Of a stretch of DNA of 64,000 bases, positions 21,575-53,116 are shown piece after piece. The stretch spans positions 16,740,001 through 16,804,000 of the forward strand of contig NC_043016.1 in the NCBI RefSeq assembly GCF_006345805.1, written 5' to 3'. The position numbers were made by a program, and so were the translations under genes. Position 1 is the stretch's first letter; every line of letters starts with the position of its first letter. The notes beneath the pieces are model-generated. The model saw only the letters and a program-made list of their open reading frames with translations. It was not told the DNA's origin and did not search any database. The stretch is from Octopus sinensis. Taxonomy: Eukaryota.

Positions 21575-21680
21575 GTGAAGATCAAACCATTCTACCTGAC
21601 TTGTCTGCATTCCGGCAGGCCAGCCGTACAAAACGTCGATATTCATTCAAAACAAGAGATGATGACAGGGTAACAAAGGG
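21575..21680 (+). CDS. MRCK: MRCK exon I: (S)EDQTILPDLSAFRQASRTKRRYSFKTRDDDRVTK(G)
   Basis: cttttAG / GTGAGT, 106 nt, phase 1 to 2. KRRYSF motif characteristic of MRCK just before the CRIB. Confidence 0.94.
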
Positions 21681-37660: not shown

Positions 37661-38790
37661 GGGCCACTTCCATTAACACGCAAATAGTAAGCGGTGTTCC
37701 GCAGGGCACTGTTTTGGGACCACTACTGTTCATAATGGCGCTCTCAGAGATGCCCTCAGCCACGCAGAGAGCCATGATCACAAGTTATGCAGATGATACA
37801 AAAGTTTCACAGGCAATTCAGAACCCTGAAGACACTAAGCACCTGCAATGTGAGCTGGACAAAATATACAAGTGGGCTGAAAAGAATAGCATGCAGTTCA
37901 ATGCTGACAAGTTTCAAGCTTTATGCTATCAGCATGAAAAACTAAATGCAATACCCAATGAATACACTGGACCTGGAGGGATTGCACTCCCAGAGGCACA
38001 ATCAGTGCGAGACCTGGGTATTTACATGAGTGATGACGCAACCTTTCATGTACATGTTGCTAAATTGGCAATGAAATGTAGGCGGCTGACCGGATGGATT
38101 CTTAGAACCTTTAGAACAAGAGACCAAGAAACCATGATGGTCCTCTGGAGGACACTTGTCCTAAGCCACTTTGACTATTGCTTTCAGCTATGGTCACCAT
38201 CCAGTGTCAAGTTGATCACAGAACTTGAGGCGATCCAACGAAGCTACACGAAGAAGATAGCCTCTGTGCTGCATTAAAGCTACTGGGAAAGACTCAAGAG
38301 ATTAAAACTCTATTCCTTGGAGCATAGGCGAGAAAGATATGCCATAATATACATCTGGAAGATTCTGGAAGGACTTGTCCCAAACTTTGGCATCAAGAGT
38401 TACACAAATGCCAGAACTGGGCGCCACTGCGTGGTGCCAAGGACTCCAAATTTGCCATCAAGTTGTAGGACAAGATACTGTGATAGCCTGGGCTTCCGAG
38501 GCACACAGCTCTTCAATATCCTCCCGAAGGACCTGAGAGACCTGCATGGGGTGGATGCAGATGTCTTTAAAATAAAACTGGATCTCTTCCTGTCAGGTGT
38601 CCCGGATGAACCAACTTCACGGCAGAAGGTGCAGATGAGGGCAGCTGCATCGAACTCTCTCGTGCACCAAATGGCAGTTGCTAAAAAGCATTAGTGAAGT
38701 AAAATCATGTAGCAACACCAAATGGCGGTGCCCCAGCATGGCCACAGCTCGTGAGCTGAAACTAGATAAAATTAAATTAAAATAAATAAA
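37661..38790 (+). mobile_element. CR1-clade LINE 3' part (copy B, a different subfamily) with 3' UTR and (ATAAA)-type tail
   Basis: SGVPQGTVLGPLLF, YADDTK, LDYC.QLWSP, LERRRERY-like; ends GGCGGTGCCCCAGCATGGCCACAGCTCGTGAGCTGAAACTAG(ATAAA). Confidence 0.92.
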
Positions 38791-39600
38791 TGTATATATA
38801 TGTGTCTATATATGTTTGTGTGTGTGTGTATATATATATATATGTGTGTATTTATATATATGTGTATATATAAGTATATATATGTGTGTATTTATATATA
38901 TGTGTATATATAAGTAAATATATGTGTATATATGTGTACGTATATATATATGTATATATATGTGTGTGTATATATGTGTGTATATATATGTGTGTATATA
39001 TGTATATATGTGTGTCTGTATATATATAATATATATATATAATGTGTGTGTGTGTGTGTATATATATTGTGTGTGTGTATTATATATATGTGTGTGTGTG
39101 TGTATATATATGTGTGTGTGTGTGTATATATATGTGTGTGTGTGTGTATATATATGTATATATATATATGATATATATATATGTGTATATATATATGTTA
39201 TATCTATATATGTGTATATACACATATATATATACACATATATATATATACATATATCATCATCATCATCATGATGATGATGATGATATATGTATATATA
39301 TATATGTGTATATATATATGTGTATATATATATGTTATATATATATGTGTATATATATATGTATATATATATATAGTGTATATATATGTATATATATATG
39401 TGTATATATATGTATATATATATGTGTGTATATATATGTGTATATATATGTGTGTATATATGTGTATATATATGTGTGTATATATGTGTGTATATATATG
39501 GTATATATGTGTGTATATATATAGTGTATATATGTATATATATATATATATATATATGTTATATATATATGTGTGTATATATATGTATATATATATATAC
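38791..39600. repeat. TA/TG microsatellite with an embedded (CAT)n(GAT)n inversion point at about 39257-39286
   Basis: Direct inspection. Confidence 0.9.
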
Positions 39601-39864: not shown

Positions 39865-40247
39865 GTGTGTGTGTTTGGGTGTCTGTTTGTCCCCACAACA
39901 TCGCTTGACAACCGGAGCTGGTGTGCTTACGTCCCTGTAACTTAGCGGTTTGGTAAAAGAGACCGATAGAACTAGGCTTACAAAGAATAAACCCTTGGTC
40001 AATTTGCTCGATTAAAGGCAGTACCCCAGCATGGCCGCAGTCAAATGACTGAAACAAGTAAAAGAGCATGTGTTTAAAATTGTGCATGCCCTGATTTGAA
40101 CACACATACGCATGCGCAATGCGGTCCAAGCGACTCTGCATTTTGACTTTCTTTCATACGTTTGTCACTTTTCTCTGCGTCTGTCTGTATGTCCCTCTCT
40201 CTCTCACTCTCTCTCTCCTCTTCTTTCAATGATTCTAACCCAAACAG

Positions 40248-40349
40248 GAGCGAGAGACGTTCGCGGGACATATCAGCGCCCTTCTCATTCAGTCACATTG
40301 CTCACATGCGTCCAGATCAAGTTTTGCCTGCCCCAGCTGTAGCTAACCT
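40248..40349 (+). CDS. MRCK: Putative cassette exon encoding an extra CRIB-like motif: (G)SERRSRDISAPFSFSHIAHMRPDQVLPAPAVAN(L)
   Basis: (CT)n pyrimidine tract then aaacAG acceptor, CT|GTAAGC donor, 102 nt, symmetric phase 2 to 2. Paralogous to exon 44188-44302 (ERRSR.IS.P..FSHIAH..PDQ). Confidence 0.78.
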
Positions 40350-40384
40350 GTAAGCATTTTACCTTGAAAAGCTGACTTTGTGCT

Positions 40385-40550
40385 ACACTCCATCATCATC
40401 ATCATTATTATTATTATTACTATTATTATTATTATTTTTATTATTATTACTATTATTATTATTATTATTGCTATTGATTTTATTATTATTACTGTTATTA
40501 TTATTATTTTTATTATTACTATATTATTACTATTATTTTTATTATATTAC

Positions 40551-40586
<36 letters not shown>

Positions 40587-40885
40587 TATTATTATTAGTA
40601 TTATTAGTATTATTACTACTATTATTATTATTATTATCATTATTATTATTTTTATTATTATTATTGTTATTATTATTATTATTATTATTACTATTATTAT
40701 TATTATTACTATTATTATTATTATTATATTACTATTATTATTACTATTATTATTATTATATTATTATTACTATTATTATTACTATTATTATTATTATTAT
40801 TATTATTACTATTATTACTATTATTATTATTATTATTACTATTATTTTTATTATATTACTATTATTATTATTATTACTGCTGCTG
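40385..40885. repeat. (ATT/ACT)n microsatellite, about 500 bp
   Basis: Direct inspection; starts about 35 nt after the putative CRIB cassette donor. Confidence 0.95.
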
Positions 40886-44187: not shown

Positions 44188-44302
44188 AATTGAAAGGCGG
44201 TCTCGTATCATTTCACCCCCTATCAACTTCAGCCATATTGCTCATCTGGGCCCAGATCAGGGAATGCAAGCATTGATAGGTCTTCCAACTGGACAAAGAC
44301 AG
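44188..44302 (+). CDS. MRCK: MRCK CRIB exon: (G)IERRSRIISPPINFSHIAHLGPDQGMQALIGLPTGQRQ
   Basis: ttttcAG / GTAATT, 115 nt, phase 2 to 0. Canonical CRIB ISxPxxFxHxxHxG. Confidence 0.96.
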
Positions 44303-48083: not shown

Positions 48084-50145
48084 ACGCTTTTTTAATTTGT
48101 GGGTTTACAAGGCAACCAATGGTTTCATGCGAAGATATCTTCACAATTGTTCAAGCATGCCATGCAGACCAGTTGGTTCTTGGCTCCATTTTATTTATCA
48201 TTTAACTTTCACGTTCTGTGCTGGCATGGATTGGATAGTTTCACTAAGATTCAAGGTATCCAGCGACTGCATCAAACTTCAATGTCTGTTTTGACTGGAT
48301 GCCCTTCTTAATACCAGCCTATTACATCATAGATTGGGTGCTGTTTATGTAGCACCAACACTATTGAGGTTGCCATGCAGTTTGTATGACTATTAGCCTT
48401 GTGGTCGTTTGTTTCGTTCTTGAGGATGCATTGATTACTATAAGAAAACGAAGGCAGAGCAGGTTCTTATGGGTGTTTGCATGGCTACTCACTTGTAGGG
48501 GATGAGCTGGCAGAAATTAAGTACCAGTTACTCACTGGGGTCGATGTAGTTGACTTAATCCCTTTGTCTTTGTTTCTCCTTTCTATGTTTAGCCCCTTGT
48601 GGGCAATAAAGAAATATAAAATGTTAGCACGCCAGGCGAAATGCTTAGTGGTATTTCGTCTGCCGTCACGTTCTGACTTCAAATTCCGCCGAGGTCGACT
48701 TTGCCTTTCATCCTTTCGGGGTCGATAAATTAAGTATCAGTTACATACTGGGGTCGATGTAATCGACTTAATCCATTTGTCTGTGCTTGTTTGTCCCCGC
48801 TATGTTTCGTCCCTTGTGGTCAATAAAGAAATAAGAGCTGTGAAAGATAGCTAATGGCAATGAGGTGACACAGGTGGTCCCATGAGGGAAAATTTGAAGA
48901 ATCAGATTGGAAGCAGGGGAAGAAGAGAGAAAGAGAAAATGAACAATAGAGCAATATGAGAAACTCAGATAGATTAGTTCAAATAATTGGTATGTGATTG
49001 GTTATTGACAATTTGTTCTAGATGAAGTTAATTTGAGGTAAAATTGAAAATTTTTGTATTTATATCAAAGTGCAAAGAATGTTGTTGAGAGTGTACACTT
49101 TTAATTCTTTCTTTACACATAATAATAAAACTAAATTTTCTTGTTGTTGCCAGATATGCATAGTACTATTTCATCCTTCTTTGAACTCATCAGCATTAGT
49201 TCAAATATTTGGTGTGACAATTTCTTCTATATTACATTGAGGTGGAGTTGCAATTTTGGAACTTAAAGAGTAATGAATGCACAGCATATATTTAATATTA
49301 TTTTTCTTAAAATTTTTAGATGTTGGTAACATGCATCTTTGAAATTATCAGCATGGTATAAGTTGGAACAAATAAATAAGTTAAATTCAACAATTTGTGA
49401 AGTTAGAAATTTCATATTCAGAGAAAATAGTTTGTATGGTTTTAAAAGTTATTTGTGATTTTATTTTTTTCCATCCTAGATTGTTAATTTTCCAGCAAAA
49501 AGGAGATAGATTAGTCTGTAACTGGTTGTCAAGTATTATAGAGAAGTTAATTTTTTGTAGATTAAGTTAATTTAAAGAAAAATGTGCACATTAATTCTTT
49601 CTTTACACATAATAAAACTAAATTTTCTAGTTGTTGCCAGACATGCATAGTACTATTTCATCCTTCTTTGAAATCATCAGCATAACATCTGCCAAAAATG
49701 GTTACAGTTAACATTTTCTCTCCAAATTTCACAAGCCTATTGTGATATTTTCTTTCCAGTTGCCATCAAGGAAAAAATCCTTCACTTTCTTTCATATCAA
49801 TTTCATCTTTGGTCTGAGTCCTTCATTCTTTTTTCTTTTGAAATTGCTTTTTCTGACGTTCTTCAGATAAAAGAATACCAAGGGCCACATATTAGGGCAA
49901 GTGGAACCACATATAGAAGTGTAGGATCCTTTGCAACATGTGAAACTTCCTGGCACAAGTGAAGGGTTAGACCGCACGCATATACCTTTGTTTTTTTTTT
50001 GGTCTTTTTACTTCCACCTTTCTATTCCCATTTGCATGGATTATAAGCCTCCAGTCCTATACTTTCTCTGCTCCACCCTATTCTTAACGAGCCTTTTTAC
50101 TATTTCCTTCTCTCTAATTTAAACATTATTAATTCTAAAAAATTT

Positions 50146-52367: not shown

Positions 52368-52954
52368 GTGTATGTATATGCTTGTGTGTCTTTTTTGTCC
52401 CCCCAGCATTGCTTGACAACCGATGCTGGTGTGTTTACATCCCTGTAACTTAGCAGTTCAGCAAAAGACCGATAGAATAAGTACTAGGCTTACAAAGAAG
52501 TCCTATGGTCGATTTGCTCGACTAAAGGTGATGCTCCAGCATGACCACAGTCAAATGACTGAAACAAGTAAAAGAGGGAGAGAGAGAGTTGTGTTAGGAA
52601 CATAAATTGTGACTAAGGTTTGGTGGAAGATTTTAATTGAAAGCTTATGAAAACAAGACATTTGTATTAGAGAGCCAGAACCGGTTTCAGCCAGGTTGGT
52701 AACGAAAGGGTTAAGATAAAAAAGAAAGGGATCAAAGTTCCTTTTCAAGCCCATAGGCTCATGAAGCCAGTTTCTTGGATTCTGCAGTGTATATATATCC
52801 CCCTGGATGGCACACCATTCCATTACAGGAGTACTCATTTATGATAATTGCTCTCTTCGTTTAACTTGGCTCTTTCTACTAACTCTTATAAGTAACCTGT
52901 TGAAATTTGAGTTTGGTATTTTGTAATTCCAGAATTTTTGCTTTTTATTTTTAG

Positions 52955-53116
52955 GAATCTGGATTTCCATGTTGGAGGATGTCCATAGGGTCAAATAACA
53001 GCAGTGGTGTTAGCAGTCCTCCTGGTTCCAGTCGGCACAGTTTGGTCGAGGACAGAGAACAGATGACTGACGCAGCTGACCAACAACCTGGCTGGCTGAC
53101 CAAGCAAATTTTATAA
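52955..53116 (+). CDS. MRCK: MRCK terminal coding exon: ESGFPCWRMSIGSNNSSGVSSPPGSSRHSLVEDREQMTDAADQQPGWLTKQIL*
   Basis: tttttAG acceptor, phase 0, TAA at 53114-53116; the other two frames stop early. SNNSSGVSSPP resembles vertebrate MRCK SNSSNLSSPPSP. Confidence 0.82.
   Translation, partial: ESGFPCWRMSIGSNNSSGVSSPPGSSRHSLVEDREQMTDAADQQPGWLTKQIL

What the first reader, a model, noticed from the sequence alone, without database searches (positions are those of the whole stretch)
40248..40349. Hidden duplicated CRIB exon: MRCK with an optional second GTPase-binding motif
Seen: deep in the 22.5-kb intron, between microsatellites, is an AG/GT-bounded 102-nt exon reading SERRSRDISAPFSFSHIAHMRPDQ. 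It is an obvious paralogue of the canonical exon 4 kb downstream (IERRSRIISPPINFSHIAHLGPDQ). It is symmetric (phase 2 to 2), so it can be included or skipped without frameshift. Read-through of its donor instead hits TAA (40351-40353), which would give a short isoform ending after the new CRIB. The I-S-x-P-x-x-F-x-H-x-x-H core is kept but the conserved Gly is Arg. Three GCATG motifs (40066, TGCATG at 40083, 40110) lie upstream. Established: the vertebrate MRCKs and Drosophila Gek as I know them carry one CRIB, and UGCAUG is the RBFOX splicing element. Inference: exon duplication created a splice-controlled one- versus two-CRIB switch that could change Cdc42/Rac avidity or specificity.
Basis: partly seen in the sequence, partly recalled or inferred. 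Interest (0 to 1): 0.85.

Follow-up and report, generated by a model that had tools for sequence, protein, structure and literature searches.

The report
Known optional CRIB exon of octopus MRCK
The 102-base exon is real and is optionally spliced into the octopus MRCK kinase to add a second Cdc42/Rac-binding-type motif, but it is already annotated in Octopus vulgaris and is the ordinary state in molluscs, so it is not a new discovery.

Summary
Window 40248-40349 (+) is an AG/GTAAG-bounded, frame-preserving 102-nt exon encoding SERRSRDISAPFSFSHIAHMRPDQVLPAPAVANL.

It is not hidden. Octopus vulgaris proteins CAI9734871.1 and CAI9734872.1 contain it letter for letter, and CAI9734870.1 skips it. 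The window matches O. vulgaris at 100% in the exons compared.

Transcript assemblies from at least two other cephalopod species either carry or exactly lack the orthologous 102 nt, with essentially identical flanks. Synonymous sites are saturated while amino-acid sites barely change, which indicates purifying selection.

The duplication is ancient. RefSeq isoforms with and without this upstream CRIB exist in oysters, mussels, scallops, abalone, Aplysia, Physella and the brachiopod Lingula.

What is specific to cephalopods is the Gly-to-Arg change, which is Gly in 13 other molluscs. The motif scores below Pfam's PBD threshold.

The RBFOX idea is not supported. Part of the GCATG cluster lies in or at the edge of a SINE, and O. 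bimaculoides has no GCATG within 500 nt. The read-through TAA is simply part of the GTAAG donor.

GTPase binding by this motif remains untested.

The parts
21575..21680 (+). Constitutive MRCK exon upstream of the cassette (…FRQASRTKRRYSFKTRDDDRVTK-G); ends with two codon bases GG
   Evidence: tblastn of P0004 and P0126
39890..40066 (+). SINE-like dispersed repeat in the intron; contains GCATG at 40029, and its 3' edge meets the one starting at 40066
   Evidence: over 5,500 first-look candidates in the own genome, scored copies 85-89% identical over query positions 1-177; absent at the O. bimaculoides orthologous site
40029..40114 (+). Cluster of four + strand GCATG (40029, 40066, 40084, 40110); proposed RBFOX sites, not supported
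   Evidence: positions; densest 100-nt cluster in the window, P about 0.017 under uniform placement; none conserved in O. bimaculoides
40200..40247 (+). 3' splice region: CT-rich tract, CTAAC branch-point-like element, acceptor AG at 40246-47
   Evidence: acceptor conserved in O. bimaculoides
40248..40349 (+). Cassette exon encoding the upstream, accessory CRIB motif (CRIB1); 102 nt, frame-preserving
   Evidence: (100% = residues 1516-1549 of O. vulgaris CAI9734871.1)
40350..40355 (+). Donor GTAAGC; in-frame TAA at 40351-53 on read-through
   Evidence: the same CTG TAA is present in O. bimaculoides
38791..39599 (.). TA/TG microsatellite upstream of the exon
40404..40876 (.). (ATT)n microsatellite downstream of the exon
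44188..44302 (+). Canonical CRIB exon (CRIB2), 115 nt, with the GMQALIGLP extension; passes Pfam PBD
   Evidence: 27.1 bits against a cut-off of 21.3; aligns to PAK4 CRIB in 5UPK/2OV2

Best explanation
Window 40248-40349 is the conserved, alternatively spliced 'CRIB1' cassette exon of the single octopus MRCK (CDC42BP-type) gene.

When included, through junctions 21680>40248 and 40349>44188, it places a 34-residue segment directly in front of the canonical CRIB. This segment is a short CRIB core followed by a Pro/Ala-rich linker. When skipped (21680>44188), the protein has the canonical CRIB only.

The exon arose by duplication of the CRIB exon before the radiation of molluscs, and probably before the split of molluscs, brachiopods and annelids. 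It has been kept as an optional exon since then. These points are shown.

The following is inferred. CRIB1 is a core-only, lower-affinity Rho-GTPase contact. When spliced in, it changes how the dimeric kinase engages membrane Cdc42/Rac-GTP, by extra avidity or altered preference. The cephalopod-specific Gly-to-Arg change after the second His retunes or weakens that contact.
For: - Identity with annotation: the O. vulgaris isoforms P0126 and P0125 contain the exon at 100%, and P0006 skips it.
- Transcripts of other cephalopods: full-length Logan mRNA contigs about 75% identical to octopus MRCK, against about 55% for other molluscs, carry both CRIBs.
- Exact skipping: same-species contigs with 99.5-100% identical 200-nt flanks either have or precisely lack the 102 nt. 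L001 and L002 include it and L007 skips it. L003 includes it and L005 and L006 skip it.
- Purifying selection between octopus and those species: pN 0.10-0.12 against pS 0.81-0.96.
- Purifying selection among closer pairs: dN/dS is about 0.1 between the two Logan species. Against O. bimaculoides, 14 of 102 nt differ with one amino-acid change, and the splice sites are kept.
- Orthology to mollusc CRIB1: an acidic residue before I-S, S/T before F, and Q followed by a hydrophobic residue after GPD.
- Conserved alternative use: RefSeq isoforms with and without CRIB1 exist in Magallana, Aplysia, Haliotis (three species), Pecten/Mizuhopecten, Mytilus species, Physella and Lingula. The cassette is exactly 34 aa in Haliotis and Mytilus.
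- Core-only nature: CRIB1 lacks the GxQxLxxLP extension that aligns to PAK4's GTPase-contacting segment, and it scores below Pfam's PBD cut-off.
Against: - No binding data exist for any CRIB1.
- The octopus CRIB1 gives no Pfam PBD hit at E<=1. The squid-like one scores 13 bits against a cut-off of 21.3, and the consensus Gly is Arg. It may therefore not bind GTPases at all in cephalopods.
- I have no transcript reads from Octopus itself. Inclusion in O. vulgaris rests on the deposited annotation, whose evidence I could not inspect.
- The species of the Logan samples are not named.
Confidence: 0.85

Rival explanations
1. CRIB1 is a degenerate pseudo-CRIB in cephalopods. The exon is kept and spliced for another reason, such as acting as a spacer or linker, a phospho-regulated or other docking motif, or an intramolecular mimic that competes with CRIB2. 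On this view it does not bind Rho GTPases.
For: The Gly-to-Arg change is fixed in all three cephalopod lineages seen, while 13 other molluscs keep Gly. There is no Pfam PBD hit for the octopus exon, and replacing the Arg by Gly in the scoring control raises it to only 17.1 bits. The motif lacks the C-terminal extension present in CRIB2 and PAK4.
Against: The I-S-x-P-x-x-F-x-H-x-x-H core is invariant and under strong purifying selection. The partial CRIB of Par6 is known to bind Cdc42 with help from a neighbouring domain; this is general knowledge, not tested here.
Confidence: 0.3
2. The exon also serves as a terminal exon. Failure to splice at 40349 gives a truncated MRCK ending …PAVANL-stop, with CRIB1 as its only GTPase-binding motif.
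For: O. bimaculoides XP_014785818.1 (P0127) ends exactly at …PAVANL. CTG TAA is present in both Octopus species. One Nucella model (P0042) ends 29 residues after CRIB1.
Against: The TAA is part of the GTAAG donor consensus, so it is expected without any function. There is no AATAAA or ATTAAA until 41452, 1.1 kb downstream, after a 470-nt (ATT)n tract. The O. bimaculoides locus lies at a scaffold end with many gaps, and the gene is split into several models. No CRIB1-terminated transcript was found in the fragment search.
Confidence: 0.1
3. The exon is a dead or recent duplicate (pseudo-exon) that is not used.
For: None beyond its position deep in a repeat-rich intron.
Against: It is present in annotated isoforms and in spliced transcripts of other cephalopods. 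It is under purifying selection and is orthologous across molluscs.
Confidence: 0.01
4. Inclusion is controlled by RBFOX through the upstream (U)GCAUG cluster.
For: Four + strand GCATG lie within 86 nt, 135-220 nt upstream of the acceptor. This is the densest 100-nt cluster in the window.
Against: One motif lies inside a SINE copy present thousands of times in the genome, and another sits at that SINE's 3' edge.
Confidence: 0.1

Closest known systems
Annotated O. vulgaris MRCK isoforms CAI9734871.1 / CAI9734872.1 (two CRIBs) and CAI9734870.1 (one CRIB)
   Same: Identical sequence.
   Different: Nothing; this is the same locus.
CRIB1 cassette of other lophotrochozoan MRCKs (RefSeq isoforms of Magallana, Mytilus, Pecten, Haliotis, Aplysia, Physella, Lingula)
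   Same: Same position between the '…KG' exon and the canonical CRIB exon. The insert is in frame at 30-43 aa (34 aa in Haliotis and Mytilus). It shares the signature residues and is optionally skipped.
   Different: Cephalopods have Arg in place of the consensus Gly (H-M-R-P-D-Q). The linker sequence differs.
Optional second CRIB of amphioxus MRCK, and the CRIB-like ISSPSNFEHIYHM of some vertebrate MRCK-alpha models
   Same: One-versus-two CRIB isoforms of the same kinase.
   Different: The extra motif lies downstream of the canonical CRIB rather than upstream, so it is probably an independent duplication. From memory only, Tan et al. 2003 (Gene 304:107) reported 3'-end splice variants of human MRCK-alpha affecting the GTPase-binding region. 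That paper was not held here.
PAK4 CRIB bound to CDC42 / Rac3 (PDB 5UPK, 2OV2)
   Same: These are the closest solved sequences. CRIB2 aligns through the core and the …GLP extension.
   Different: CRIB1 did not produce its own match and lacks the extension. No MRCK CRIB entry appeared among the PDB matches.

Membership tests
MRCK / CDC42BP kinase gene | Architecture of kinase, KELK/DMPK coiled coil, C1, PH_MRCK, CNH and C-terminal PBD; the window exons belong to it | tested here: met
   The window exons are 100% identical to O. vulgaris MRCK P0126 within exon bodies. The Pfam families of full-length relatives are listed.
CRIB / PBD motif (Pfam PF00786) | Core I-S-x-P-x(2-4)-F-x-H-x-x-H | tested here: met
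   The core DISAPFSFSHIAH is present.
CRIB / PBD motif (Pfam PF00786) | Consensus [VM]-G after the second His | tested here: not met
   The sequence is H-M-R, with Arg for Gly. The same holds in two other cephalopods, while 13 other molluscs have Gly.
CRIB / PBD motif (Pfam PF00786) | Score at or above Pfam's gathering threshold (21.3 bits) | tested here: not met
   Octopus CRIB1 gives no hit at E<=1. The squid-like CRIB1 scores 13 bits and other mollusc CRIB1 motifs score 14.6-19.3. CRIB2 scores 27.1.
CRIB / PBD motif (Pfam PF00786) | GTP-dependent binding of Cdc42/Rac | not testable with these tools
   This needs pull-downs, ITC or a modelled or solved complex.
Lophotrochozoan MRCK CRIB1 cassette exon | Same intron position, in-frame cassette, and CRIB1 signature (acidic residue before I-S; S/T before F; Q followed by a hydrophobic residue after GPD) | tested here: met
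Lophotrochozoan MRCK CRIB1 cassette exon | Both inclusion and skipping observed | tested here: met
   O. vulgaris isoforms. Logan transcripts with exact 102-nt presence or absence.
RBFOX-regulated exon | (U)GCAUG near the exon, conserved in related species | tested here: not met
   The motifs are present in the window but partly in or bordering a SINE. None lies within 500 nt in O. bimaculoides.

The most novel reading that the evidence does not exclude
An accessory CRIB exon has been kept as an optional cassette in MRCK for more than half a billion years across molluscs, brachiopods and probably annelids. Analogous optional second CRIBs arose separately in amphioxus and vertebrate MRCK-alpha. 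This one-versus-two CRIB switch appears not to be discussed in the literature I could search. It may be a real regulator of how MRCK reads Cdc42/Rac signals, and the cephalopod Gly-to-Arg change may have altered its GTPase preference.
Probability: 0.35. Interest if true: 0.45.

Novelty: already known. Interest (0 to 1): 0.2.

Why it matters
For the scan, this is a correct piece of exon-finding from raw sequence that rediscovers an annotated isoform. It adds no new biology for octopus.

The wider pattern may deserve a short note from people who work on Rho effectors. MRCK is routinely described as a single-CRIB kinase (reviews read). Database annotations nevertheless show a deeply conserved, splice-controlled tandem CRIB in lophotrochozoans, and separate optional second CRIBs in amphioxus and some vertebrate models. 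Nobody appears to have tested what the second motif binds.

Tried and rejected
- Fragment search with the joined 123-aa octopus peptide, to catch short octopus transcript contigs or read-through products. It found only other molluscs' fragments and no octopus reads.
- Looking up the SRA run numbers in papers to name the Logan species gave no hits. Their cephalopod origin is inferred from about 75% identity to octopus against about 55% to other molluscs.
- Tan et al. 2003 and Zhao & Manser 2015 are not held, so the vertebrate splice-variant literature could not be read.
- Mutually exclusive use of the two CRIB exons was considered and rejected. The exons are 102 and 115 nt with different end phases, and no full-length CRIB1-only transcript was seen.
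- A third CRIB copy in the window was sought and none found in six frames.
- A-to-I editing restoring Gly was considered and rejected. The Arg codon is CGT in octopus and CGT or CGC in the other cephalopods, with no A to edit.

Full report
**1. The observation**

- An acceptor AG (40246-47) follows a CT-rich tract. The exon 40248-40349 is 102 nt, and the donor is GTAAGC.
- In the frame set by the upstream exon, which ends at 21680 with GG, the exon reads SERRSRDISAPFSFSHIAHMRPDQVLPAPAVANL.
- The downstream exon 44188-44302 reads IERRSRIISPPINFSHIAHLGPDQGMQALIGLPTGQRQ.
- The exon starts after two codon bases and ends with two codon bases, so including or skipping it keeps the frame.
- Read-through gives CTG TAA (40351-53).
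- Microsatellites flank it at 38791-39599 and 40404-40876.
- A relaxed CRIB pattern occurs only at these two exons in all six frames of the window, so this is not a chance match.

**2. What gene and what organism**

tblastn of full-length relatives places the 3' third of an MRCK (CDC42BP-type) gene on the + strand. It runs from CNH-domain exons near 1168 to the last coding exon near 52949-53113.
- Within exon bodies the window is 100% identical to Octopus vulgaris MRCK proteins.
- The window is G000:C20:16740001-16804000 of a 2.72-Gb assembly.

**3. The exon is already annotated and is alternatively spliced in octopus**

I translated the intron in frame and searched with the exon region only. 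This found two full-length MRCK proteins from transcript assemblies that carry both CRIBs in tandem.

The 90%-identity cluster of the O. vulgaris protein holds three O. vulgaris isoforms.
- CAI9734870.1 (1713 aa) reads …VTKG|IERRSR…, so the exon is skipped.
- CAI9734871.1 (1747 aa) reads …VTKG|SERRSRDISAPFSFSHIAHMRPDQVLPAPAVANL|IERRSR…, so the exon is included.
- CAI9734872.1 (1725 aa) shows the same inclusion with an alternative 3' end.

I could not see the evidence on which that annotation rests.

**4. Independent transcript evidence in other cephalopods**

The Logan contigs are 5.3-6.7 kb and hold the whole 5.2-5.3-kb coding sequence, so they are spliced mRNAs.
- Their proteins are about 75% identical to octopus MRCK and about 55% identical to gastropod, bivalve, chiton or Lingula MRCK. 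I infer that they come from other cephalopods. The run numbers could not be tied to a species.
- Within each species, contigs with 99.5-100% identical 200-nt flanks either contain or exactly lack a 102-nt segment orthologous to the exon. L001 and L002 include it and L007 skips it. L003 includes it and L005 and L006 skip it.
- The exon is therefore a conserved cassette in cephalopods.

**5. Selection**

- Between octopus and these species, the exon has pN 0.10-0.12 against pS 0.81-0.96 (saturated).
- Between the two Logan species, dN/dS is about 0.1. The canonical exon behaves similarly.
- In the O. bimaculoides genome (L008, GCA_001194135.2), 14 of 102 nt differ but only one residue changes (Ile to Val). 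The AG and GTAAG splice sites are kept.

**6. Age and distribution**

The 120 best named relatives were scanned for CRIB motifs.
- Two tandem CRIBs are the rule in gastropods: Haliotis, Nucella, Aplysia, Physella, Lymnaea, Biomphalaria, Babylonia and others.
- The same holds in bivalves: Crassostrea/Magallana, Ostrea, Pinctada, Argopecten, Mytilus, Mya and Tegillarca.
- It also holds in a chiton, in Lingula and in the annelid Ridgeia.

Cluster members show RefSeq isoforms with and without the first CRIB in Magallana, Aplysia, three Haliotis species, Pecten/Mizuhopecten, several Mytilus species, Physella and Lingula. The cassette is exactly 34 aa in Haliotis and Mytilus.

The octopus exon carries the CRIB1 signature rather than the CRIB2 signature: an acidic residue before I-S, S/T rather than N before F, and Q followed by a hydrophobic residue rather than Q-G-M-Q after GPD.
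- The duplication therefore predates the mollusc radiation, and probably the split from brachiopods and annelids.

Amphioxus has an optional 33-aa second CRIB. Two vertebrate MRCK-alpha models have a CRIB-like motif. Both lie downstream of the canonical CRIB. I read these as separate events.

**7. What is particular to cephalopods**

- The consensus Gly after the second His is Arg in octopus and in both other cephalopods. It is Gly in all 13 other molluscs compared.
- The Arg codon is CGT or CGC, so A-to-I editing cannot restore Gly.
- Against Pfam PBD (cut-off 21.3 bits), the octopus exon gives no hit and the squid-like exon scores 13 bits. Other mollusc CRIB1 motifs score 14.6-19.3, and Lingula and Ridgeia CRIB1 about 27. 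Octopus CRIB2 scores 27.1.
- Only CRIB2 aligns to solved CRIBs, namely PAK4 with CDC42 or Rac3 (5UPK, 2OV2), including the …GLP extension that CRIB1 lacks.
- CRIB1 is therefore a core-only motif, and it is the most diverged in cephalopods.

**8. Mechanism**

Shown: a splice choice yields MRCK with CRIB2 alone or with CRIB1, a linker and CRIB2.

Inferred: CRIB1 is a weaker accessory GTPase contact that changes avidity or preference of the kinase at membranes. MRCK is described as recruited rather than activated by Cdc42 (review). The main rival is that cephalopod CRIB1 no longer binds GTPases and serves another role. No tool here can decide between these.

**9. Claims that do not hold**

RBFOX control:
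- Four + strand GCATG lie in 40029-40114, the densest such cluster in the window (P about 0.017).
- However, 39890-40066 is a SINE with thousands of copies.
- The O. bimaculoides intron has none of the motifs, and no GCATG within 500 nt either side of the exon.

Short isoform:
- The TAA is inside the GTAAG donor consensus, so it is expected by construction.
- The first poly(A)-signal hexamer is 1.1 kb away.
- The only support is XP_014785818.1, which ends at …PAVANL. That model comes from a gapped locus at a scaffold end where the gene is split into several models.

**10. Literature**

The reviews read describe MRCKs with a single CRIB and note that splicing has not been characterised systematically. 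No paper on a two-CRIB MRCK was found. The key 2003 paper on human MRCK-alpha splicing is not held.

**Verdict**

This is a correct observation and a largely correct structural reading. The feature is already annotated in this species and is ordinary across molluscs. Interest is low. There is a modest open question about what the accessory CRIB does.

Noticed in passing
window 37699-38620 (+): Remnant of a reverse-transcriptase ORF (Pfam RVT_1, 36.4 bits) from a LINE-like retroelement. It lies inside the 18.6-kb intron, in the same orientation as the gene.
   Followed up: partly
window 39890-40066: SINE-like repeat with over 5,500 first-look candidates in the genome and copies 85-89% identical. 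It is absent at the orthologous site of O. bimaculoides, so it inserted after the two Octopus species split.
   Followed up: partly
window 49858-49959 (+): Alternative 3'-terminal coding exon (…TTLE|IKEYQGPHIRASGTTYRSVGSFATCETSWHK) used by O. vulgaris isoform CAI9734872.1 in place of the exon at about 52949-53113.
   Followed up: partly
P0044-P0058 (Branchiostoma), P0117 (Varanus), P0119 (Bufo): Amphioxus MRCK isoforms differ by an optional 33-aa second CRIB placed downstream of the canonical one. Two vertebrate MRCK-alpha models carry a CRIB-like ISSPSNFEHIYHM about 40 residues downstream. One-versus-two CRIB variation therefore recurs outside molluscs.
   Followed up: no
L008 (O. bimaculoides CM046616.1, 57493414-57524431): The MRCK locus sits at the very end of the chromosome-scale record and holds nine N runs of more than 20 bases (8.5 kb of N in total). 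The gene is split into at least three RefSeq models there (XP_014786460.1, XP_014785818.1, XP_014785817.1).
   Followed up: partly
P0042 (Nucella lapillus ACOMHN_034822) and P0139 (ACOMHN_034825): On a second Nucella contig, one MRCK model ends 29 residues after CRIB1. A separate 202-aa model starts at CRIB2. This is the same split at this intron as in O. bimaculoides, which suggests that gene predictors often break here.
   Followed up: no
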